From: Stylophora pistillata
Lineage: Eukaryota
Length of the DNA: 64,000 nt
Direction of reading: 5' to 3'
Assembly: GCF_002571385.2 (NCBI RefSeq)
Contig: NW_019217977.1
Span: forward strand, 192,434-256,433
Under the pieces are notes generated by a model. It was not told the origin of the DNA. It searched no databases and was given only the letters and a program-made list of their open reading frames with translations. Position 1 is the first letter of the stretch. Each line of letters opens with the position of its first letter. The translations under genes and the position numbers were made by a program. Below are positions 6,001 through 57,553 of this stretch, piece after piece.

Positions 6001-9000
6001 TAACTGTTTAAGGGTAAATCTACTAGTCCTAAAATGCTAAATAGCAACACTTGAATTTTCTGTTATAGATGGTAGTAAGAGATTGCAGAAGACGTGAACA
6101 TATGGTAAGAACATCAGTGGCACATGAGGCGCAAATTTTTTGTTCTTACCACAAATTACTAAACAGACACATGTTTAGTAATGTTCTTACTCTATTACTA
6201 AACAGACACATGGCAACTTGGAATCTAATTAGATGGAATAGATAGCAGTCAGCATAGCCAATCAGATTGTAGCATTTGTGATGGAACATTAATAGACTCG
6301 TACTCATACAGAAGCTAGTGGGAAACGAAAGAAGGCAATGAGAGGGCACAAAACACAAACAGCAGTGCAGAGGGAAAAATTTGAAAATAGAGAAAAAATT
6401 TTAATTACCTTCATTTCTGTTGATATGTTTTTCCCTCCGCCTTGACCCTCTTCTGGAACTAACCACGGAATCTGCTTCAGAGTCAAAATCACCTGCTGTT
6501 GAGTGCCCTCCATGGGGACTAAAGGTAAATATCACAAAAATTATAAAAGAAGGATCTTAAAATAGTTATCTTAGGAGAGGGAAAACAAAACATTTGGGTC
6601 TACATTATAATTTAAACTCCTGTCAGCTCTGATTTTGCAGTCTGGTGCTTCCCAACTGAGCTACAAACGAATAAAATGGGTAAGGTTCTAAAGAAACTGT
6701 GGTGCTGCACCAGTGTGGGGTATTACAAGTTTTGAATTAATATTCAGATGATAATAGTGAAAAGATAAAGATAACTTTAACTTACTGGAAAGAAGGTGGT
6801 CTGGAGTCTCCAATACCAACTGTTCTGGGCATTGGAGGGTGCATGTCAGATGATGCTGATATGACTGACTGCTGATCATCTCTGCCTGTGTCTGACACAC
6901 TACTTGTGTCCGACGTGACAAGCTGCAACAACAATTGATGACTACTGATCAGGCTCCGCTTGTTCGAAGGGTGGATAACTCTATCCACTGGATAAATCGC
7001 TATCCAATGGAAAGTGCAGTACATTTTGGAAACACTTATCCACCTGATAGCAATTTATCCNNNNNNNNNNNNNNNNNNNNNCATAAGTTCTAAAGTAGGA
7101 ACCAACTTGACACCCAAATTAGTTAATATATTCTCCACATATTTCCTCTGGAACTAACAAGAAGAATTTATTTACCAATCAAGATCTTTTTTGGTTGATG
7201 ATCATTTTCTTTAATCTTGTGATCTTAATGCATGATTCAGGGGTGATTTGGAAGGAGAAATTAGATGCTAGGTACTGTAGGTGGGGGTTCAAAGGTTAGT
7301 AGGCAGAACAGAATGATATCAAAAAAGTACCGAAGGATTAACAATGCATGTTTGAGCAAGACTACTATTTTGATAAGAGCTGACAAAAATCAGTGTTTTA
7401 ACACTGAATGAAAATTGCATAAAAGAAAAAATTGACAACATAGTTACTGGAGCACTGCCCTCTCTTCATCTCTCCATCAACTACACAAAGTTTAATTGTC
7501 CTTAATATCACCAATCCTATTACCCACCAATTATAGCAAAGTTTCTTCATTCTTGTATGTGATTTGCCTCTTAATTCTTGAATTTTCAAACTTTTTCCAA
7601 TACTTAATTACATTGCCAAAAATGTCAGAAATTAGAATTCTATGGAGAAGTCTTCACTCACAAAAGCCTAAATCTGACAGCAGATGAACTAATTAGATTT
7701 TTAGTCAGTGATTTCTTTTGCTCCAGGATACGAATGTAATCCTTACACACAGCACATTCTTTGCAAATAGAGACGGATTTTATTCTATTAACAATATACC
7801 TCCCGGGGACGAATACAAAATTTAGGTTCTTTCAATTGTACACGAACCATGCACACATTTCAAAACAAGAAAATGTCCATGGCGTGATTTCCTTTATGAC
7901 AAATCAGAAGGAAAATATTAGAACGATTCCTCTGAGGCAGACTTCAGCAATTAACATTCTCATTTAAGGCTTGCCTTGTCAGTTTAAGAGCTTTTATTAT
8001 TGTCACAAGAAAGTAATTAAATCACTTGGTGAACAATACAGAGGCAGTAGGATATTCTGCGCTTGTTCAAAATATTATCATCGATCATTCAGTGGTTTGC
8101 GTTTCCATGATTAAAAGCCACCACACAAATTGGATTTATCAACAAAGCAAAGGGTAAAGCTCCTTAACAAAGAACTAAAACCATGAGGATTATGAAACAA
8201 AGCTTAACGTTTTAAAAGTAGGAGAAAAGCATTACTGAAAATCTTTCACTTTCCTTCTTGTAATATTATTATCCAGAAATTTAACGAACTTATGATGAGG
8301 TCTCCTTGGAACCATCAATTATATTTTTGCTAACAACAAGCAATAAAGGATAAAAAAACAGAAATAAGTATTTTTGATACCTTAGACTCAAAATATCTGC
8401 TCAAATAGAAATCATAAGGGAACACCTAACTAGTACGTGAAGAAAGACTTTTTTCCCTCTCAGGCCACCATCATTTGATCAAAAAAATGTAATTGTTTAA
8501 ATCTCTCAAAAGGATGCTAATGAGGTATGCCAACAAGGCCATTAGCACTTCCATCTATGAGTGAAATACCTGGACTACATGACAAAGCAGAACTGTCGGT
8601 CAACCCAACAAAACCAGCTGGAAAATTTTCATCATGATATGCTACACAAAAAAAGAGTCATATCCAACAGAAAAGAACAAACCTTGAGTATTTATAGGGT
8701 GTCTAAAATACTAAAATATCAATCTCTGCTGTGAATTGACTAATCCATGCTTAATCCTGCCATTCCATGTGATATGAGCGTGAATTGCGAGTTTTCAATA
8801 CTGGTAATGAGTAGTTACCAAAACATCTGTCTTAAATGTATTTTACTTGGTATCACATCACTCATGCTGTTATCAGTCAATCGCTGGGTGGCCAGTCATT
8901 CACAAATCCGAACGAAAACCAAAAAAAAACATTTTGGCGATAAAAATTATGAACAAACGAGAAAGGAGATGCTATTTGGCGCGTTCATTCCACTGCTTGG

Positions 9001-12279: not shown

Positions 12280-15200
12280 TTAAAATAAGGCAAATGCAGG
12301 TCTGTTTGGGCTTTTAGCATTACCAGGTTGGGTAGTTGTGCCAAAAGAGAAAGTGAAGCCTTCTGGGCTTTTTGATTGGTGGGTAAAATCTGCATCTCCA
12401 AAGATTGAACAACCACTTGCTACAGGTGACAGGTTTGTGCCAAAGAGTCCCATGCTGCTTCTACTCTCTGTAGTTACTGATGGTTCAAAGAGGTTTGCAG
12501 CAGGCCTGTCTAAATTAAACTTGCTAGCTGACCCTGCAAAAAGAAAAAGTCAAAAGAAAACTACTCTAGGTACTGGTATCATAGCAAGCATTTGGGACTT
12601 GGTAACAAACACTTAAGTAAGGTGACAGTTACTGTAGTTACTGTTACTCCCCTAAGAAGTTGGTTTAATATGTGTTTTATTCTGTTGTGATGTTTAACAA
12701 CCAGGAAAAAAAACAGGAGAATTGTTATGATCTATCACAAGGGTGAATTCCAGTAATTACCCAGTGTTTGTAATTTAACTTTCTCTTTGGGCACAGATCA
12801 ACTCTCCAGGTTTTCCCCTGATTATACCAGGACATTGTTACAATATTTTTCATGTAAAAAAAACTTTGCTAATCATATTAATTTAACACTTGTGTTAGGC
12901 CTCCACAATACAACAAAATTATTATATTGTCTATTATTCAATTGGAATCTCTGGGTTATTGTTAATTAATTCTCTTACAGAGATATGATTTAATCTTATT
13001 GTAAGAGAATTAATTTCCATGTGAAAATGACATTGCAATGACCTTTCTTTCTTTCTTGTTGTAGTAAACCAATTAATCAGGGTATGAACCAAGAAAAATG
13101 AGTTTTCCATTAAATTTTATCATTCCCTTGCAAGACATTGGGTGATGATAATTAATAACTCTAAGAGTACAAGAAACACATAATATTACCATTTGAAATC
13201 CCTTTCAAATGAAACTGTCATCAATTTTTAATAATTTTTTAAAAAAGCTAAAATAAACATTAAATGCTGAGAGGATCAGAATAGCACATCTTCACTGGTA
13301 TGATAATTCTTCTTAGGAAGATATATTTAATTTGTCACATAAATACAGGGTTTAAAGATTAATCTTTGATGGACAGTAGCCTTGATATGGTAGATATCCA
13401 TATCACAGAGTTCGCCAAGTGTCTTCTTATTATTATGATAAATCCCCTGGTGACATCACGCAACAAAAAATGGGTTTTTACAATCCTAAATCCTGCTGAA
13501 CTTTCAGCAGGAAAGACTTAATAATGTCACACAGTGCAAACATAATAGCCAAAGGTAGATGTCATGCGATCAGACTTATCCATTATTTCTATCATGAATA
13601 CAATCTCAATGCTCTTTGAATTACAAACCAATTGATCCTGAGGTATTGCTTGTCTCTTGCATGTTGAATAGAAAAGGTGTACTATCTGCACTTGGCTGAA
13701 AAAAAAAATTGTAGATCAGAAATTTTTCTTTTTTGAGTATTGTTTTATACTTTGACAATTTCGTTAGTCATCAGAGATTATCGATCTTTACTTATATAAT
13801 AACTTGTATTTGTAGAAGTCCTTATTACTTTTTGTTTAAACTCTAAATCAGGAATATTGAGAATGCATTGTTCACCTTTTTTTTTAATGGAGTGTCTTAA
13901 AACCACAACCTAAGTAATCACAATAGTCAATAAGAACAGAGGGAAAAATCACAAGAGTTCAATGAGAATTAAGGTAAAAACATGCAAACTGCCACGAGCA
14001 TTGGAAAGTGAGTGTGACCTAGTTGTGATTGGTTTTGGTTAAAAAAGACATCTTTATGATTTAGAAGTGGCACATCTTTTCGAGATCAACTTAAAGCACA
14101 GTAGAGCAAAACGAATGCAATCCTGGATTCCTTTCAACACTCAAATTGAAACTCACTCAGAGTAGTAGCTCTTGGATACCTGATTGTTTTCCCCATCCAC
14201 AGAGCCATGGTTAAACATTGGACGACTTTGAAAGAAGAAACCATCTCCAGGTGATTTGGTGAGCTGCTGGATCATATCTGTGTGCACTTCAAAGTTAAAT
14301 GGACTTTTGACAACTTCTGGGGTTGAAATGGAACCACAGTTTTGCTGATCTGTTGATGTTGGTGTTGTAGGAAAGACTGTCTGTTCCTCGTCACCATGCA
14401 GAGTAGTTGATGTAGTTTTATTAGTCTTAGCTGTTTTGTATGAAATATTAATACATTTGACTTTATTCAACTGGATTTGATAGAAAGCCGAAGAATAGTT
14501 AATAAATTGATGGAGAATGTTTTGAGTAGTCACTTTAAGGTCTGTCAACCATTTTTTTGAATTTAATAGTGGCAGAAATTCAAAAGTTCATCCTCTACAT
14601 TTTTTTACAGCTACAACAATCTTAATGGTAACCATTACAATTTCCTCAAATGTTATCAATGTATTATATTCTACAGAGTTGTAATTGGACAGTGTAATTG
14701 GACAGTTGGCTGTATTTGGACACCTATACTGGGACATTTGAAGCAACCAATGATACCAAGTCCATTGAGCTAAATCCACCAATCACAGAATTGACTACAA
14801 TAACCATAGCAACAACTGCTTACCCTACAAATCTAGGCAATTTCCAACATGGAGGATTTTTTTACTTTAAACAATGCCTAGCTACCAGATATATTGTCTC
14901 AAAGTAGATGGAAATTGTAATGGTTATGAGTAATTGGTAACATGACTTTGTATTGTCTAATTCAGTCCATAATCATACTTGTGATTGATAAATCAAACTC
15001 CCAATTCGAGGTCATCAGTTTTGTAATCACTCAAAACATATTATTGTAGACTGAGTTGGACTCCATTCAGTCCTGTTACCATTATATATTGAGGTATTTT
15101 GTATATGGATGATTGATAAATTACACCACCCTCTATTTGCCAATGTATCACCTAAAGACTGAAGGTGTTGGTCTGTGTAGCTCTCCTCATAAGCTGAACT

Positions 15201-18200
15201 TGTTTGATCATCTGTGCAATGCCTTCTCTGCTGATTTGGAGTGACTGATAAGTGCTCAGGAGAATATTTCTTCATTGGTACAGCCTCTTTTGGCTGGCAT
15301 AGCACATTTTGGTCTTCATATGACTCCACTTCCATATTTGACACAATGCTCTCTTGTTTTGAGGACTGATCAAAATCTGAGTGCTCAACTTGCTGTGATA
15401 TTGTCACTGGGGTTTGAGGTAGAGAGGTATTTCCATCTGGGGAATTGTTCTCTTGATGACTCTCATCCACACATTTTTTGAACTCTGCTTGTTTGATGTT
15501 GGCTATCTTAGTAGTGATCCTTTCTATGCAGTCTTCAGTTTTTCTTCTTTCAATATTCAGCTGAGCTCTTTATATCGTCAAAGAAAATAACTTTGAACTG
15601 GAGGCCTCCAAAGTGACTATACTTTCCACTGATAGACTGTGCAACAGCACGATTTAACCCATATAATAGTTGATGTTCAGCTTATGTAATAATGTTAACT
15701 GATTTTGAGTAATTCAGAAGTGGGTAATTTATCTTGATTTCTGATTGATAAGAAGTGTTGCACAAGGATTATTTTTAGAAGGATACAGTTGGATCATGAG
15801 TGGAATAGCAGATGTGATTCCTTTCTTTAGTGATTCTGAAATTAGATCGATAAAGATGCTTTGTTGTGTTTGTGTAACTTTTTAGTCCCTAACATCAGAT
15901 TAAATATTCTCCACAGTGTTCTTCATACCTCGCCCTCCTATGGTACTAACAAGGAGAATTTCTCTAACTGTTAAGATCTTTATTATTATTATAGGTGGTG
16001 ATTATTTTCTGTATTCTCATAACAGAAGTGTTAGATTCAGCAATGATACTGTTTGGAGAAATTAGATGCTCTTCACTTTCAGGGGTTAGATAGACAAATC
16101 AGCACGGTTTTGATATTGGAAAGCCATCCTAACAATACCATCACCAAATGACACATTTATATTACCTTCTATGGTCGTCTTTTCTTTTTCCATAATGGAA
16201 ATATCTTCTTCCATTTGCTGGATAGTGGATCGTATTGTCTGCACTAGGAAAAATGAAATGTGAACAACAAATTAACAATTTCCAACAGCAATATGGTATC
16301 TTTCAACATTTCTATAATCCCTGGAAGTAAATGAATATGGTGACTGTTGCTGATAACTTACATTCTTCTTTGGTTTCTTTGGTGTTGATCTTTATCTTTG
16401 TGAGCTCCTGAGCATTTTCTTTACTTTCATACTGCCTTTTATATCTGTCCCATATTGCCTTGTACCTGTTGAGGATGCTCTGGTTTTTTGACCTAAATGA
16501 AAATTAAGGCTAGGATGAAATTCCAGTTATAACTGAAGCAAATTGTAAATGATTTACACCATTTGGAATTATATTTTCTCCCACCTGGCCTTCTCAAGTT
16601 TACCAACCACTGTTTCTTTCTTTTTCTCCATGGCCTCCTCGTGTTCCTGTAGAACACAATTGGTTCGTTTCAAGCTGGGTGGGGAACAAGAGAATTAATT
16701 GTTGTCAACTTTCAAACGTTTGCTAACTATTTCGTGTTTTTCAGGGAGCAAGTTATAGGATAGTGACTGGTTAGTATACTTTGTTCTGAAAGGGTGGCAC
16801 ACAGTGTGGTAAGAAGATCAGGGGCATCCTAGGCTAATTTTTAAAAATTTTCAGATTAGAATTTGCAAAACAACAATAAGCAATTATTGGATGAAGTTGA
16901 GCATGCTGGGGCGGATGCAGGGGTGGATCGGTCAATCCCCCTAAATTATCCCTCAAAATGCTGGAAATCATGTTTCCAAAGACCTAATTTTCAAAATCTC
17001 CTTGGGGAGCATGCCCTTGGGCAATTCTCCGAACCCCCCTTGACTAAATCCTGGATCCGCCCCAGACATGATAACATTAATTATCAAAACCAAGGTCAGG
17101 GTTATCAACCAAAGCCGAAGGTTGAGGCATAGTTAATCTATGGTTGAGGCAGATAACACAGTAAAAAGGTTTCATTGATAATTCATGATATCATGCAAAA
17201 CCAAATTCAATAATTGTTTTATGGTATATCTTTTAAACAATCTGCAAAAGAAGATACTCTTCTCAGAGTTTACAAAAGGTTGAGAACACTACACATGCAC
17301 ATAAGGCTAGGAAACTAGGCAGACTTTGAATTCAATGTTATAAATGCAATATCCACCAGAAATATTGCCATCTCATGTCAACTTCATATCCTATTGTATA
17401 TTGATCGAATGCCCTCAACCAATCAGATTTTCCATGATAAGTCTAATGTATGATAATATTAATTAAGAGTTGAGCATTTGCACCCATAGAGCATTTCCAC
17501 TGTTTTTATGTAGACTACAACGTTACATCACTCTTTACCTGGCACATATCTCCCTGTTTTGTGCAAATTGTTTGTGCAGCTGCTTAGCTTCTTCATCAAG
17601 TTGTGTGGTAGACTTTTCCAATTCCTCAATTTTATGATTTTTCTCCTCAAACTGCTTCAAGAGGGCTAAATATTTGATAAGAGTTAACACTTATGTACCA
17701 AATTCTTGTGCAGCAGAATTGATACAAGTATAGAAATCATAGCTCGAGATTGATTGTAGAGGCTGGGAAATAAAAAAAGCTTTTTCTAGACTTTCAATTT
17801 CTGTGGAGGGGAGATGCAACCAGCGAAAACATTTATTGCAATCTGTGGAACCCTTTATCCAGCACTATTTTTTTTTTTTACTCACATTAAAATACAGGTT
17901 ATTGAAAAATAACTCTTCCATAAATATTAAAGCTAAAAAAAGAAGATGCCTTGAAATACTCTCACTAAGTTTTTCTTAATCCTGTTAATTCTTATTCACT
18001 ATTTTAACAGCCAATTTTCCTTTTTATTTTAGCCCCTCTGAATTAAACTCCCAAAACAATTTCAAATTTCCGGTATAAATATGAAGAAGATTTAAGAATT
18101 TGCGACGCACCATTTATTTAGTATATTTTCTTACCTGCATAACGCTGTTTCTCTGTCTCAATAAGGCGGACTTGTTCAGAATTTTCCAACTCTGTTTTAA

Positions 18201-18616
18201 AGAGAAATTTCGTCAAGACAGAGTTAGTCAAAACAAACACTGCACAACGATTACGTAACACAATGTAGCAATTGTTTGAGTTGTTAAGCAAAGAAGTTTT
18301 GAAAGCTTCATTTTCATTATGTGGAGACATACAGATCATTCGTCTACCACAAGATTATCTCAGATTATCTTTCAAACACATTAACAAAAAACTTTCTTTT
18401 CTCTTTTGTCACGAAATGATAGGAATTTCTAGGGAGTTATTTTTAAGTAATTTACGCTGTGTCTACATGTCCGGCAGTCGATAGGTTTTTAAAAAAGATC
18501 TTTAAAACACTTTCACCTGCTCTTTGAATAAGCTGATCAATTCCCGGTGAGCACTGCTGGTGCTGTGCAAGGGGTTGTTGAGGAATCAAAGGAAAATTCG
18601 ATTCTGAGGTCTGCAT
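12280..18616 (-). CDS. SIX6OS1: SIX6OS1/C14orf39-like synaptonemal complex central element protein (~539 aa)
   Basis: Exons 18616-18517, 18191-18135, 17665-17539, 16674-16585, 16492-16362, 16243-16166, 15835-15787, 15567-15152 (donor uncertain), 14430-14180, 13695-13629, 12533-12280 join into one 1620-nt frame. The N-terminal coiled coil contains LDEEAKQLHKQFAQNREICASLKRTNCVLQEHEEAM and YKAIWDRYKRQY, resembling human SIX6OS1 as I recall it (DEEID...CRNWKPTCDVFRKHEDYM, YKEVLKQYQLKY). A disordered S/T/P/Q-rich middle is followed by an F-rich end, PEGFTFSFG...AFALF*. Confidence 0.78.
16909..17062. mobile_element. GGGCGGATCCAG-TIR MITE
   Basis: TIRs GGGCGGATGCAG / CTGGATCCGCCC with CTG/CAG flanks. 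Same family as 20043-20212. Confidence 0.8.
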
Positions 18617-21326: not shown

Positions 21327-31170
<9,844 letters not shown>

Positions 31171-32217: not shown

Positions 32218-33518
32218 GATGAAGTCTTCAATGTAGTTTGTGTTGGTTGATGACTGAACCTGGCCGTGGCTGGTCACGCAAGCGGACATGGCGCGTTGCG
32301 TGAATGATCCGTGAGATGTGCAAGGAAGATTTGTCGATTTATCGTGTATTAGATTCTCGACACAATTATTTAGTTAGGTTAGGAGAGCTAACTTCCTTAT
32401 TGCGCTTCCCTTCGTTTCCGAAGCTGCAATCTCGGACTCCTTCCAATTATAAATTTGTGAAAAGGGTTTTATTTCCTTGCATCACGTTTTCATTACGGAA
32501 TGAAATAATGGTGTTATTGTAGAATGTGATACTCCCTTCTGGTTACTTACATAGCCACACCCGTTGGCAAGCAGTTGGTAATCTGTTGATGTACTTCACT
32601 TTTACAAATGCGTTACCTCCAGGGTTTGTTTTTGACAATTATTTTCGGGTTTACTGCAAATGGGTAACTTATTACTGTTGGCCTAAAGCTGTTCTTCACA
32701 ATTACTCATTTCCAATTCATCATTATTAATAATAGCCTTGGGCCCAGTTGTTCGAGGGCTGATTAGTGCTAACCCAGGTTTAAATTTAAATCCAGGTTTC
32801 AACAATTCTCTGCTCAAAAGTGTGTTTGGGATGATTTTTCCCATTTTATTAGACCATTCAATTATCAAATTGAAGACAAGTAGAATTAAAATGAATCTTT
32901 TTTTAAACCTTTCAGATCTGAAATCAAATTTCACACTAATCCTTGGTTATTTTAACCCACCTTTGAACAACCTGGCCCAGGGCATTAAAAACTGAGTCCA
33001 ACAATTCTGAATGGTGGTCAGCAAATTCCCCAATCACTGAAAGATACTTCATAAACATTCTGCTCATGTCGGAAGTTAAGAAACGAGGGTAACTTATCTC
33101 TGTGGCCAGATTAGAAAAAAATCACCCCTTGATCCTAATATACCATCAATCACATTCTCCACACTGTTCTCTATACATTTCCAAAGGTGCAGACAAAGAG
33201 AATTTGATTAACAATCGAGAGCTTCTTTAGTTGGTGGTCATTTCCTTTATTCAAATTTGCTTCATGTTTAACTCAGAGGTGACAATGTAAAGAAATTAGA
33301 TACTAGTCACTATTACGAGTCAAAGGGTTAAAGTCCATAATGAAGTTACAAGGCAAATCAATCACAATTCATTTGTTGTATTTTCCTTTCTTTAACTTTA
33401 GTGAAAATTCTTGTTATTTGATGCACTGTCTAACACATTTCTTTTCCCATCCCTTGGCAAGCCATCTTGACAAAGCTTCACACTTCACACTACATTTGCT
33501 TTTATCTTGTCTTTTGGC

Positions 33519-45683
<12,165 letters not shown>

Positions 45684-45837
45684 TTTTCCTTCAAAAAGAC
45701 AATTCACGATAAGTTTCCTGTTAGATCTTAAAATATGTCACTACATCATTTGCTATTAAAAAAAAAACCTTTTAAAACTTTTCCTCATCATTGATTAAAA
45801 AAATAATAAGTAGGAAACAGGAAAAAAAAAATAGAGA

Positions 45838-46049
45838 TTAACCCTTAACAACCTAGCCTCACTATGCATATTCTCCATACTGTTCTCTATACATTTCCTA
45901 AGGTGCTAACAAGGAGAATTTGTTTAACAATCAAGAGTTTCTACAGTTAGTGATCATTTTCCTTATTCTCATGACCTCAATGAGTGATTCAGGGAGGATA
46001 TTGTAAGGAGAAATTACATGTTGGTCACTCTTAGGCATTGAAGGGTTAA
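45838..46049. mobile_element. TTAA-flanked (piggyBac-like) MITE, representative of the dominant ~200-bp family
   Basis: TTAACCCTT...AAGGGTTAA ends. Other copies at about 1665-1882, 2234-2435, 5325-5635, 7100-7298, 15900-16088, 19525-19640, 24680-24815, 25645-25805, 26900-27010, 30137-30327, 33125-33330, 35900-36380, 36857-37060, 38276-38470, 39907-40120, 52026-52230, 53966-54140 and 58118-58310. Confidence 0.8.
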
Positions 46050-53400: not shown

Positions 53401-56400
53401 GGGTTGACTGTTAAAATTCTCCAAGAAATTAAATTTGTAACTAAAAGGCAACATAGATGCATTCAAGCAATCCTTGCAATTTTCAGTCAAGAACTGAATT
53501 GGATGAAGAAATAAAAAATTCCTTTTTAACATAAAGATGGTTCAGTAAGGACTAATGAAGCCTCCTTCATTGTAGGATGTTGATATCAAGAAACAGACAG
53601 GAAACAATCCATATGCATTTATTCAGTTTGTTGAACTCAGCAGTGCCATCCAAGCTCGTCGACGAATGGACAGGGAATTTGTAGGAAGGAACAGAGTCAA
53701 GGTACCTTTCACTAGAAATGTTGAAATTTGATATTCAAAAGCCTCCTGGTACCTTGAGTGAAGCGTTCTCTCAACTGGTTATGAAAGACGAAGTGATATA
53801 AGAGACAAGAATGTGAAATTTCCCCATGAAAAGAATGGAATGAGCAAATGTTCCATTTTGTATTCTTGTCACACTTAAGGCATGCATCCAGGGGTCATAT
53901 TGTGATGCGCAATTAAAACTCTACAACCCAAGTTTGCCAAACTATAAGGGTTTTTATCACACTTTTAACCCTTGAACTCCTTAGAACTGATNNNNNNNNN
54001 NNNNNNNNNNNNTTGGTGTCAAGAATCTGGTGTTAGATCTAGAAAACACCTTCTTCCTGATAGGCTTGAGTATTCTCATTACCTGTTTACTGGATAGGGC
54101 TGCTATAGGGAGAAGTTACATGTTAATCACTTCAGGGCGTTGTTGAAATGTTAAGCTTGCATCACAGAGACTTATTTTGAAGCAGATGTCCAGCTCTATC
54201 ACCTATGATAGTGAAACCACATTTTGAAAGTTTCTATCATGCCAGGGAAAATAGAACATTTTCAATCATCTTTAGGGCAGCCAAACTGTTTCTCATTCCT
54301 CTTGAATCATTTGTGTTTCAGGTTGGATTTGGCAAGGTGTCCCCCATAAACACCATCTGGGTAGGGATGCTGGGTGATCTGAGTGAGCAGCAGATTGAGA
54401 GACACTTCAGTCGATATGGGCGTGTCACTAAGGTGGTGGTGAATTATCACAGAGAACAGGCGCTGGTGAGTTTTGACAGCGTGGAATCTGCCAGCATTGC
54501 CCAAGCAGAGATGAAGGGCAGGAATATGTTTGGAAGGCGTGTGAGGGTAAGAATGGAAACCTCAAGTAAAAAAAAAAAAAGATTCTATCTATAAGAACGA
54601 CTACTCATGAGGTGTTCCCTATTTTGTCTTTATGATTCAGGTTGAGTTTGTAAGTCGCGAAAGCCGACAACTTTTTAACGACGCCTTGCAACGTTCTGCT
54701 CCGTCTGACAGCAGCAGTAGTAACCGAAGATACGAACCTTCATCCCCTAGAACACGAGGCAGAGGCAGCGGCAGCGGCCCCGGGTATTACGATCATCGAT
54801 GGGAAAGAGGCCGAGGAGGGCGCGGGACTATGAGACGCGAGATGTCCAATCACCGACCTTGGCATAGAGGCGGCGGTAACTAAGACTATCCTGAGGGTAG
54901 CGGTTATCACCAGAGAGGCCATGCTCGTTACCGCTCGTCGTACGAGATGGGTGGAGACGAGTCAGATGACTATGATCAAGAACTGCGGGAATATAACTTC
55001 AGTCGGCAGAGAGAGAGGGAAAAAGAACAAGGCCGACAAAGACATGAGAGAGGCACACGAGACAGGGGGGATAGGGAAGATGCTAGCTACAGTGCAAATG
55101 AACGCTTCTATCAAGACAATCAAGACCGCTGGCGGGAAAATAGAAGTAGTTCGGGCTCTTTCGAAGAACCACGTGATCGTAAAGAAACACGTTCCCGTGA
55201 ATTACCGGTCGAACCCGACCGAGAAAGAGCTGGGTATAGTGAAGATGATGAGCGAGCTGCCATGCATAACAAACCGTCAATTCGCGACGTTGAGCAGGAA
55301 GAAAAGCGACCGAGGAGAAAAGAGAGAAAGAGAAGGAAACCTCCATCGCCAACTCCTGAAGCAGCGGACGGAGAGAAAGAAATCGTAAGTGGAGGTGAAG
55401 AATCTGCTGAGAACCGAGGTCTTGAGCAAAAGGAGCCGAGGAAAGGTCGTCGGGATGGTGATACTGAGACTGCTGCACAAAAGAGTAAAAAGGTAGAGGC
55501 AGCAGATCGAGTCTGGGACGAGCGACGAGTGGACGGTAATGGTACCAGGGCTTTAGAAACACTTGTGAAAGACGGCGAGACAGAACTTGCTCCTGCATCG
55601 CCTCTACCCGAAAAGAGCCTCAGAAAAAAGGAGAAAAAGGATGTAAAGAAACGGAAGAAACACAGGCGTATCCGAGCTTCGTTGGGCGAAGAAGAGGAAG
55701 AGCGGGAGCGGCAGGAAGAAACTGCGCTCACTGCCGAGGAAGCAGCTGGCAGGGAGGCCTCTGATGTGACCTTGTCTGTCATTAAACCAAGAGACCACGT
55801 TGTTACCACTGACTCACACACACCTGAAATCATGGACGGCGATGTTCTTGAAAAAAAGAGATTTGATCAACCTGAATTTGAGAGTCAGAAACCTGTTAGA
55901 CGTCATTCTACTGAGGATAGGCCGCCTAAGGAAGAAAGGGATTTTCCACGCGAATCTGGGAGCCGGTCACCTCGGAAGTCGCACAGAGACGAGCGACGGC
56001 GTGACTGGGAGAAGACAGATGGTGTGAGGCAAAAACGACGACGGACGNNNNNNNNNNNNCCCCGAGAAGCTTCTGAAGGTTTCCCGCCCACCGAGATTTT
56101 GTCAAGATTAGGCCCATCTTCAGACGGGCTTCCCGCACAGGTGGTTAAATCATCATTTGATATAGCGGCGCCGACATTACATTACGATGGAAACCGTTCG
56201 GTGCCTTTGGGATCATCCCCTGCTACTCTCAGTCCCATTCCCCCTGCTGGTATACCGCTAAACCCAGCGGTTGTGGCACCACCCAACGTTTCGACACCTC
56301 CATTAGCAGTGCACTCTCCTGGGCTGCCTATTGGGGTTCCTGTGGCACCAGATTTGGGATCTCCCCAAGGTTTACCCCCTCCTCCCCCACCACACCCAGA

Positions 56401-57553
56401 CTACAACCTTTCGTCGGCCGTCCCACAGCCGTCGAACACGGACACGCTGTTGGACCTGTTGCGGCGGTATCCAGTCGTCTGGCAGGGGTTACTGGCTCTG
56501 AAAAACGACTCTGCAGCTGTGCAGATGCATTACCTGGCTGGTAACGGTCGCTTGGCCGAGGTATCCCTACCGCAAGCTCCCGCCAATGGGGTAGGAGGTG
56601 TCCCTCCTCCCATTCGAATCGCTCAGCGGATGAAGTTGGAACCGTCACAGCTGGAGGGTGTCATAAAGAGAATGCAGGTATGGGGCCGTGACACAACGGT
56701 AGACTACGCATAAACTGGGTCATTTTTTTCTATCGTGTAAAACCTCTGGTAGGAGACCATAACTTGTTAGTTTATTGAGATGGAATTGTACAGAAGAGGC
56801 AACAATAATGTTAGGATATCAGAGAAGATTCAAACGGAATGCAATCAACGAACTGGAAAGTTTAGGCTGAATTTGTCGAGATAAACATTCCTTGACGTGC
56901 CTATTTTTTTTATTAGAAGCATTAAAAAAAGTCACGTTTTGGTAACTTGGAACAAACCCTGAGGAGACGCTGAAAGCAAATCTTAACACGCGACGTTCGG
57001 TTTTTTTTCTTTTACTTTTGTTCTTTACATATCTCACGTTGAAAGTGTTTTTTGAGTATTGGCCAACTCCTGAGAGCGTCTAGTTGTATTGAGATTTAAT
57101 CGCGCTTTCTACGTCGCATGAGCTCACCGCAGTGTTGTCGATTTTCTCAACAGTCGGACAAAGATCACTGTCTTTTGTTGGCACTGCCTTGTGGCCGAGA
57201 TCCTTTGGATGTCCACGCGCAAACACGCGCATTGAAGAGCGGTTTCATCAATTATCTGCAACAAAAACAAGCGGCAGGGATCATCAATGTGGCACGACCA
57301 GGCAGCTCTCAGGTGAGCGAGGTTTTTAAAGAATACTAAATTAAAAGAAAAATAACTTGTTGGTCTTATTTTTATTGTATCATTATTTTATTTATTAATT
57401 TTTTATTTTTTATTTGTCCCTCAGCCCAGCTACGTTCTTCACATTTTCCCACCGTGCGACTTCGCTCAGGAGCACTTGGCCCGAGTCTCCCCAGACCTCT
57501 TGGACAGCGCTGCGGACAGTGGGCACTTAATGGTTGTGGTAGCCTCTGTATAA
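47438..57553 (+). CDS. SPEN: SPEN / split ends / SHARP (4 RRM + SPOC), with one in-frame TAA at 54881-54883 and a 12-N gap
   Basis: Exons 47438-47520, 48229-48507, 50713-50909, 51258-51488, 51811-51922, 52456-52538, 52890-53059, 53576-53701, 54322-54546, 54641-56677, 57154-57312, 57425-57553. The N-terminus MVRETRHLWVGNLPENIREE...YGRVESVKILPKR is SPEN-diagnostic RRM1. RRM3: TRTLFVGNIEK. SPOC: LLRRYPVVWQGLLALKNDSAAVQMH...IRIAQRMKLE...FINYLQQKQAAGIINV...LHIFPPCDF...HLMVVVASV*. Confidence 0.95.

What the first reader, a model, noticed from the sequence alone, without database searches (positions are those of the whole stretch)
12280..18616. Hidden 11-exon SIX6OS1-like meiotic gene in an apparently cnidarian genome
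Seen: eleven short GT-AG exons join in phase into ~539 aa; the ORF track shows only fragments. Established: SIX6OS1 is a fast-evolving synaptonemal-complex central-element protein with an N-terminal coiled coil and an F-rich C-terminal tail. Inference: the C-x3-K-x-T-x2-V-x3-HE-x2-M motif, the Y-K-x5-Y-x3-Y pattern and the terminal GFTFSFG...F-x-L-F* make this an orthologue. That would place both the coiled coil and the aromatic tail before the cnidarian-bilaterian split. No Six6 gene is adjacent in this window.
Basis: partly seen in the sequence, partly recalled or inferred. Interest (0 to 1): 0.8.

Follow-up and report, generated by a model that had tools for sequence, protein, structure and literature searches.

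The report
Coral SIX6OS1-like meiotic gene, already annotated
The eleven-exon gene is real and is most likely the stony coral Stylophora pistillata's version of SIX6OS1, a protein that helps zip chromosomes together in meiosis. It is already in the public annotation as an unnamed protein, and a 2026 paper has already reported SIX6OS1 in a sea anemone, so it adds a name more than a discovery.

Summary
Observation confirmed. Eleven GT-AG exons on the minus strand (18616 down to 12280) join in phase to 1620 nt, or 539 aa. The translation is letter-for-letter RefSeq XP_022793501.1, [quoted passage not shown]. So the gene is not hidden; it is only unnamed.

It is single-copy. The same 11-exon structure is found in Pocillopora, and there are orthologues in six coral genera. 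RNA contigs confirm four junctions.

Interpretation probably right (about 0.8).
- Pfam S6OS1 (PF15676) is the best family hit for the two pocilloporid proteins, but below the cut-off (18-20 bits against 27). It is absent in the four other corals.
- ESM-Atlas nearest clusters are chordate SIX6OS1, both for the whole protein (0.95) and for the tail alone (0.90).
- AlphaFold gives helices 24-244 followed by a disordered C-terminal half, the published SIX6OS1 layout.
- 16 of 18 tail phenylalanines are invariant across corals.

No vertebrate or Nematostella sequence could be fetched. Profile-profile comparison, reciprocal best hit, SYCE1 binding and germline expression are therefore untested.

No Six gene is linked: the Six cluster lies on another contig, and the neighbours are a WD40 gene and Dishevelled.

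Novelty is low. Williams et al. (Sci Adv 2026) already reported cnidarian SIX6OS1 binding SYCE1. This is a new member of a known kind. The scan had not noted it before.

The parts
18517..18616 (-). Exon 1 (100 nt), with the ATG at 18616-18614. Encodes residues 1-33, an N-terminal unstructured lead-in and the start of the first helix.
   Evidence: donor GTGAAA. Residues are conserved in six corals. It lies outside the stretch laid, so no RNA was tested.
18135..18191 (-). Exon 2 (57 nt, phase 1).
   Evidence: 93% nucleotide identity to the Pocillopora exon. Residues 34-52 are nearly invariant. RNA depth was 0 in the four runs.
17539..17665 (-). Exon 3 (127 nt). Coiled-coil core, with LEKSTTQLDEEAKQL invariant in corals.
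   Evidence: The donor junction 17539|16674 is seen in an RNA contig of X1.
16585..16674 (-). Exon 4 (90 nt). Carries the C93...HE..M110 motif together with the end of exon 3.
   Evidence: Both of its junctions are seen in RNA contigs.
16362..16492 (-). Exon 5 (131 nt). Carries Y135, Y142 and Y146, all invariant in corals.
   Evidence: The acceptor junction is seen in X1, X2 and X6.
16166..16243 (-). Exon 6 (78 nt).
   Evidence: Orthologous exon of the same length in Pocillopora.
15787..15835 (-). Exon 7 (49 nt), encoding ESLKKGITSAIPLMIQ. This is the exon that a 10-exon reading misses.
   Evidence: 96% nucleotide identity to Pocillopora. G200, S203, I205 and P206 are invariant.
15152..15567 (-). 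Exon 8 (416 nt). Contains the end of the helical domain (to about residue 244) and then the fast-evolving disordered linker.
   Evidence: dN/dS of the linker is 1.47.
14180..14430 (-). Exon 9 (251 nt). Linker plus the conserved tail block SPFNFE.H..IQQL.KSPGDGF.F..RPMF.
   Evidence: The donor junction 14180|13695 is seen in X1 and X6.
14157..14179 (-). 23-nt extension used by RefSeq isoform X2 (alternative donor GTGAGT at 14156-14151). It shifts the frame and removes the Phe-rich tail, giving 470 aa.
13629..13695 (-). Exon 10 (67 nt, phase 0), encoding PSADSTPFLFNMQETSNTSGSI.
   Evidence: Both junctions are seen in RNA contigs of X1 and X6.
12280..12533 (-). Exon 11 (254 nt, including the TAA at 12282-12280). 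Phe-rich end of the tail: NLF, GLFG, SIFG, GFTFSFG and the terminal AFALF.
   Evidence: The acceptor junction is seen in RNA contigs. All Phe except F505 are invariant in corals.

Best explanation

Shown here: an 11-exon, 539-aa protein. Residues 24-244 form two long alpha-helices under purifying selection. These are followed by a rapidly evolving disordered linker (245-384) and a disordered tail (385-539) whose phenylalanines are almost all invariant among corals.

Inferred by analogy with mouse, human and Nematostella:
- In meiotic prophase the helical N-terminal half binds SYCE1. In mammals the N terminus of SIX6OS1 opens the SYCE1 dimer into a 1:1 complex, and downstream helical sequence makes a second interface.
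- This helps to initiate and stabilise the SYCP1 lattice between homologous chromosomes.
- The aromatic tail acts as a set of short linear motifs that contact other components of the synaptonemal complex or the recombination machinery.
For: - Gene reality.
- Family: Pfam PF15676 S6OS1 is the best-scoring family for P0004 (E 9.7e-4, residues 49-250 against profile 2-189) and for P0002 (E 2.6e-4). The same profile matched nothing else in the whole 398-Mb genome in six frames, so it is not promiscuous for coiled coils.
- ESM Atlas, whole protein: nearest clusters are 'Protein SIX6OS1', score 0.95, 205 of 256 features, 9 of the 10 best hits with a family share it.
- ESM Atlas, tail 350-539 alone: nearest are S6OS1 fragment clusters, score 0.90, 178 features.
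- AlphaFold2: helices 24-146 and 149-244 (pLDDT mostly above 90 over roughly residues 30-190), with the rest disordered. This matches the published description of a helical region 1-261 and an unstructured C terminus with conserved patches (PMC5095591).
- 16 of 18 tail Phe are invariant in corals.
- dN/dS is 0.24 in the helical part, 1.47 in the linker and 0.50 in the tail, which fits a fast-evolving synaptonemal-complex protein with constrained modules.
- A cnidarian SIX6OS1 exists and binds SYCE1 in yeast two-hybrid assays (PMC13693662).
Against: - The Pfam scores (18.2 and 20.1 bits) are below the curated 27-bit cut-off. They come from two closely related pocilloporids. The four other coral orthologues gave no S6OS1 hit, and neither did single exons.
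- Coiled-coil composition can inflate such scores.
- Atlas similarity is a language-model measure without an alignment or E-value, and its error rates were not measured for parts of proteins.
- No vertebrate or Nematostella SIX6OS1 sequence could be obtained.
- No SYCE1 was identifiable by six-frame HMM.
- Nothing here shows germline expression. The RNA seen is low-level, partly unspliced, and comes from whole-colony libraries.
Confidence: 0.78

Rival explanations
1. A cnidarian- or hexacoral-specific coiled-coil protein with a disordered aromatic tail. It would be unrelated by descent to SIX6OS1 and would resemble it only in composition and layout. Its function would be unknown, perhaps still meiotic or nuclear.
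For: - The Pfam hit is below the cut-off and absent in 4 of 6 orthologues.
- Neither the word-based searches nor the profile of six corals reached any protein outside Scleractinia.
- PDB sequence search gave nothing.
- All database names are 'uncharacterized' or 'hypothetical'.
Against: - Two independent kinds of comparison, HMM and language-model features, both pick SIX6OS1 first among about 25,000 families and 7.7 million clusters.
- The tail alone also picks it.
- The length, the position of the helical domain and the disordered Phe-rich end all match the published description.
- SIX6OS1 is now known to exist in Cnidaria (PMC13693662).
Confidence: 0.15
2. An FG-type nuclear-pore or TPR-like nuclear-basket protein. 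The coiled coil would anchor it at the pore and the Phe-rich tail would be an FG-repeat region.
For: - Exon 11 gives a weak Nucleoporin_FG match (E 0.012, 16.9 bits against a cut-off of 32.2).
- The Acropora millepora orthologue is auto-named 'nucleoprotein TPR-like'.
- The tail is 11.6% Phe and contains GLFG, SIFG and FSFG.
Against: - There are only about nine Phe motifs, with no repeat array.
- On the full-length protein the Nucleoporin_FG match disappears and S6OS1 ranks first.
- Atlas neighbours are SIX6OS1, not nucleoporins.
- No nucleoporin or TPR domain was detected.
Confidence: 0.04

Closest known systems
Vertebrate SIX6OS1 / C14orf39 (Pfam PF15676 S6OS1), a synaptonemal-complex central-element protein that binds SYCE1
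   Same: - Similar length: 539 aa against 574-587 aa.
- An N-terminal helical half of about 250 aa, then a long disordered C-terminal half with conserved aromatic patches ending in Phe.
- Single-copy gene.
- Best Pfam family and nearest Atlas clusters (PMC5095591; PMC7467691).
   Different: - The profile score is below the family cut-off.
- Going by the Pfam alignment, the coral protein has about 48 extra N-terminal residues.
- The gene is not head-to-head with a Six homeobox gene; here it sits between a WD40 gene and Dishevelled.
- Binding to SYCE1, localisation and germline expression are untested in the coral.
Nematostella vectensis SIX6OS1 (Williams, Gardner, Nowotarski and Gibson, Sci Adv 2026, PMC13693662)
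   Same: An anthozoan cnidarian protein identified as the SIX6OS1 orthologue. It interacts with Nematostella SYCE1 in 4 of 4 yeast two-hybrid assays.
   Different: It is from a different order (Actiniaria against Scleractinia). That paper does not mention corals.
FG nucleoporins (Pfam PF13634 Nucleoporin_FG)
   Same: A disordered Phe-rich segment with FG, GLFG-like and FSFG-like motifs.
   Different: There is no repeat array and the score is far below the cut-off. There are no nucleoporin domains, and the full-length comparisons point elsewhere.

Membership tests
SIX6OS1 (Pfam PF15676 S6OS1) | Match to the family profile at or above the curated gathering score of 27 bits | tested here: not met
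   P0004 scores 18.2 bits (E 9.7e-4) and P0002 scores 20.1 bits (E 2.6e-4). S6OS1 is the best family for both, and the match is collinear from profile position 2. The four other coral orthologues, single exons and the six-frame genome scan give no hit. The match is significant by E-value but sub-threshold by the curated score.
SIX6OS1 (Pfam PF15676 S6OS1) | Architecture: an N-terminal helical region of about 260 aa followed by a long unstructured C-terminal region with conserved patches (PMC5095591) | tested here: met
   AlphaFold2 with the coral alignment gives helices 24-146 and 149-244 at high confidence, with residues 245-539 disordered. The conserved tail blocks have 16 of 18 Phe invariant.
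SIX6OS1 (Pfam PF15676 S6OS1) | Nearest relatives by an independent similarity measure are SIX6OS1 proteins, with no better match to another family | tested here: met
   ESM Atlas, whole protein: 0.95, 205 of 256 features, 9 of 10 best hits with a family. Tail only: 0.90, 178 features, 8 of 10. This is a language-model measure with no alignment.
SIX6OS1 (Pfam PF15676 S6OS1) | Reciprocal best hit or profile-profile homology with vertebrate or Nematostella SIX6OS1 | not testable with these tools
No vertebrate or Nematostella sequence was available by reference.
SIX6OS1 (Pfam PF15676 S6OS1) | Direct binding of the N-terminal helical region to SYCE1 (PMC7467691; PMC13693662) | not tested
   Coral SYCE1 could not be recovered. 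The six-frame PF15233 scan gave only a spurious hit in a 2727-aa open frame. No complex job was sent.
SIX6OS1 (Pfam PF15676 S6OS1) | Meiosis- or gonad-restricted expression and localisation to the central element | not tested
   Only whole-colony poly(A) runs were laid. They showed low depth and partly unspliced contigs. No gametogenic-versus-somatic comparison was available.
SIX6OS1 (Pfam PF15676 S6OS1) | Head-to-head linkage with SIX6. This is the origin of the name in vertebrates and is not a property of the protein. | tested here: not met
   Four SIX1_SD genes cluster on contig C156, whereas the window is on C194. The flanking genes are a WD40 gene and Dishevelled.
FG nucleoporins (PF13634) | Extended array of FG repeats matching the profile above its cut-off | tested here: not met
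   16.9 bits against a cut-off of 32.2, on exon 11 only. There is no hit on the full-length protein.

The most novel reading that the evidence does not exclude
The Phe-rich C-terminal tail is an ancient functional module of SIX6OS1, not just the helical SYCE1-binding half. Its blocks are SPFNFE.H..IQQL.KSPGDGF.F..RPMF, F.FN.Q, FSFSFG and a C-terminal F-x-L-F. On this reading the module was inherited from the cnidarian-bilaterian ancestor. It would act as a set of aromatic short linear motifs, possibly FG-like 'stickers', that tie the central element to other factors or give it condensate-like cohesion. That would give a defined, mutable target for a region whose function is still only speculated on in mammals.
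Probability: 0.45. Interest if true: 0.5.

Novelty: new member of a known kind. Interest (0 to 1): 0.3.

Why it matters
It gives a name and a testable function to a gene that six coral genome annotations leave as 'uncharacterized' or 'hypothetical', or mislabel as 'nucleoprotein TPR-like'.

[quoted passage not shown] The 2016 discovery paper placed the origin of SIX6OS1 in cartilaginous fish.

The coral alignment also shows which tail residues are constrained, namely nearly every phenylalanine. This is useful for designing tail mutants in Nematostella or mouse.

It could serve as a marker of meiotic prophase in studies of coral gametogenesis.

The evolutionary point itself is no longer new.

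Tried and rejected
- **First gene model.** My first 10-exon model (522 aa) was in frame but missed the 49-nt exon 7. It was corrected after P0002 showed the extra 16 residues.
- **Exon-by-exon Pfam scan.** No S6OS1 hit. It gave only chance-level coiled-coil families and a weak Nucleoporin_FG match on exon 11.
- **Whole-genome six-frame scan with PF15676.** Nothing; the exons are too short for this profile.
- **Full-library phmmer with exon 8.** Only three hits, all coral. This did supply P0002.
- **Three word-index searches.** Only Scleractinia came back. The candidate list was saturated by coiled-coil words, and the tail-only search had just 203 candidates. This says nothing about absence elsewhere.
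- **PDB sequence search with the coral profile.** Only chance coiled-coil matches.
- **Rfam on 11-20 kb.** Nothing.
- **SYCE1 by six-frame HMM.** A spurious hit in a giant coiled-coil open frame. No SYCE1 protein could therefore be handed to complex prediction, and no complex job was sent.
- **The look-up of encoding contigs for P0004.** Records of the window's own genome are withheld.
- **Reads.** The four runs did not show six of the ten junctions and had zero depth on exon 2. Exon 1 was outside the 6000-base stretch allowed. This is low expression in whole-colony libraries, not evidence against the exons.
- **Rejected readings.** A pseudogene is rejected: the frame is intact and dN/dS is below 1 in the structured parts. 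A paralogue family is rejected: there is a single locus.
Full report
**What is there**

The finding lies on the minus strand. Reading the three minus-strand frames and locating splice sites gave first a 10-exon, 522-aa in-frame model. A full-library phmmer search with the largest exon, given by reference, returned a 537-aa Pocillopora damicornis protein, P0002. It carries 16 extra residues (SLKKGITSAIPLMIQL) between my exons 6 and 7. Those residues are encoded in the window at 15835-15787, with a proper acceptor and donor.

With this exon, and with the acceptor of the next exon moved 2 nt upstream to 15567, the model has 11 GT-AG exons:

| Exon | Window coordinates (minus strand) |
|---|---|
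| 1 | 18616-18517 |
| 2 | 18191-18135 |
| 3 | 17665-17539 |
| 4 | 16674-16585 |
| 5 | 16492-16362 |
| 6 | 16243-16166 |
| 7 | 15835-15787 |
| 8 | 15567-15152 |
| 9 | 14430-14180 |
| 10 | 13695-13629 |
| 11 | 12533-12280 |

Together they make 1620 nt, or 539 aa.

**Identity with a public record**

The translation is identical at every residue to P0004, which is XP_022793501.1, [quoted passage not shown]. So the window comes from the stony coral S. pistillata. The gene is already in RefSeq, unnamed.

An older model, P0011 (1290 aa), fuses it to the downstream Dishevelled gene. RefSeq isoform X2 (P0010, 470 aa) uses a donor 23 nt further on (GTGAGT at 14156-14151), which shifts the frame and removes the tail.

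**A note on procedure**

No typed or joined model was sent to any search tool. The exons were joined only inside scripts. This was done to check phase, to compare with database proteins and to compute substitution rates. All later full-length searches used the database protein P0004 by its id.

**Is it a real gene?**

- The genome holds a single locus for it.
- The Pocillopora locus L002 has the same 11 exons in the same order, all GT-AG. The exon lengths are identical except for exon 9, which is 245 nt against 251 nt.
- Orthologues exist in Stylophora, Pocillopora, Oculina, Desmophyllum, Porites and Acropora.
- Nei-Gojobori dN/dS between Stylophora and Pocillopora is 0.48 overall. It is 0.24 in the helical part (24-244), 1.47 in the linker (245-384) and 0.50 in the tail (385-539). 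These are point estimates without confidence intervals.
- Contigs of coral poly(A) RNA-seq runs show junctions e3/e4, e4/e5, e9/e10 and e10/e11 at exactly the predicted bases.
- Logan-derived proteins P0012-P0014 span residues 352-539 contiguously.

The other six junctions were not seen in the four runs laid. Several contigs run unspliced through introns, and depth on exon 2 was zero. Exon 1 lay outside the 6000-base stretch that could be laid. I take this as low expression with pre-mRNA background in whole-colony libraries. Those exons rest on the RefSeq model and on residues invariant across six corals.

**What the protein looks like**

AlphaFold2 with the six-coral alignment predicts two long helices, 24-146 and 149-244. 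Their pLDDT is mostly above 90 over roughly residues 30-190. Everything from 245 to 539 is predicted disordered.

Across the corals, invariant columns make up:
- 47% of the helical part
- 7% of the linker
- 30-40% of the two tail blocks

The tail is 11.6% phenylalanine, against 1.4% in the helical part. Of its 18 Phe, 16 are invariant in every orthologue that covers the column. Conserved blocks are SPFNFE.H..IQQL.KSPGDGF.F..RPMF, F.FN.Q, FSFSFG and the C-terminal AF.LF.

**Is it SIX6OS1?**

Evidence for:
- On the full-length proteins, Pfam S6OS1 (PF15676) is the best family for P0004 (E 9.7e-4, 18.2 bits, residues 49-250 against profile 2-189) and for P0002 (E 2.6e-4, 20.1 bits, 49-173 against 2-126).
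- The profile is not promiscuous. It hit nothing else in the 398-Mb genome in six frames.
- The ESM Atlas puts the whole protein next to chordate 'Protein SIX6OS1' clusters (0.95, 205 of 256 features, 9 of the 10 best).
- The tail alone (350-539) lands next to 'S6OS1 protein (Fragment)' clusters (0.90, 178 features, 8 of 10).
- The architecture agrees with the original description: a helical region 1-261, and an unstructured C terminus with conserved patches (PMC5095591).

Evidence against, or missing:
- The Pfam scores are below the curated 27 bits.
- The two proteins that hit belong to one family (Pocilloporidae), and the four other corals do not hit.
- Atlas scores carry no alignment.
- I could not bring any vertebrate or Nematostella SIX6OS1 sequence into the session. 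All three word-index searches stayed within Scleractinia. So there is no profile-profile test and no reciprocal best hit.

As I recall the human sequence, those motifs would sit about 17 residues earlier than in the coral. The Pfam alignment implies an offset of about 47. At most one of these registers is right, and I could not decide between them.

Overall I put orthology at about 0.8.

**Mechanism (inferred)**

In mammals the SIX6OS1 N terminus (1-67) binds the SYCE1 core (25-179) and converts its antiparallel dimer into a 1:1 complex. Downstream sequence within residues 1-262 binds SYCE1 177-305. Both interfaces are needed for synapsis (PMC7467691). Nematostella SYCE1 and SIX6OS1 interact in yeast two-hybrid assays (PMC13693662).

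By analogy, the coral's helices 24-244 would bind coral SYCE1 in the central element. The invariant aromatic tail would provide short linear motifs for further contacts.

None of this was tested here. SYCE1 could not be recovered, so no complex prediction was run.

**Context**

Four Six-class genes cluster on contig C156, whereas this window is on C194. The neighbours are a WD40 (G-beta-like) gene upstream and Dishevelled downstream, and the order is the same in Pocillopora.

**Novelty**

Gómez-H et al. (2016) wrote that SIX6OS1 first appeared in cartilaginous fish (PMC5095591). Williams et al. [quoted passage not shown] The evolutionary inference is thus already published, and that paper does not mention corals.

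What remains is a correct naming of an unnamed coral gene, together with the observation that the aromatic tail is constrained and is itself SIX6OS1-like.

Verdict: a real feature, probably read correctly, and a new member of a known kind. Interest is modest.

Noticed in passing
window about 10806 down to below 40, minus strand: A Dishevelled gene (DIX, Dishevelled, PDZ and DEP domains) lies directly downstream on the same strand and probably runs off the window start. An older gene model (P0011, 1290 aa) fuses it to the SIX6OS1-like gene. The order WD40 gene, SIX6OS1-like gene, Dishevelled is conserved in Pocillopora damicornis (L002).
   Followed up: partly
window 14151-14179, minus strand: RefSeq isoform X2 (470 aa) uses an alternative donor 23 nt downstream of exon 9. 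This shifts the frame and removes the whole Phe-rich tail. It may be an unproductive or NMD-targeted isoform. The RNA contigs laid here showed only the X1 junction.
   Followed up: partly
window 15565-15567 and 15787-15835: A tandem AG-AG acceptor sits at the start of exon 8. Skipping the 49-nt exon 7 and using the downstream AG would keep the reading frame (522 aa). This is hypothetical and was seen in no record.
   Followed up: no
window 16906-17065 (intron 3): A 160-bp element has 16-nt inverted ends (16906-16921 and 17050-17065), which looks MITE-like. RNA-contig depth there is 370-1950, against below 20 for the gene, with many different flanks. It is therefore a very abundant dispersed repeat. 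Rfam gave no match.
   Followed up: partly
window 15887-16085 (intron 6); also 1704-1886, 7131-7271, 24655-24814, 33151-33315, 38275-38473, 39906-40122, 45825-46049: A roughly 200-bp interspersed repeat has at least eight copies in the window. It is also present in the Pocillopora locus.
   Followed up: no
window 14202: RNA contigs from two independent runs (X1, and X6 at depth 49) both break at 14202, inside exon 9, and continue with unrelated letters. They also run unspliced past the exon 9 acceptor. This is unexplained. It could be a chimeric contig, another allele or another transcript.
   Followed up: no
window 54947-56713, plus strand: A 588-aa open frame in a GC-richer stretch carries a SPOC domain (E 4e-8). 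This is consistent with the SPEN-like gene that another first-stage note places here.
   Followed up: partly
G000 contig C156, 183-289 kb: Four Six-class homeobox genes (SIX1_SD domain, E 1e-41 to 5e-48) cluster within about 105 kb on another contig.
   Followed up: no
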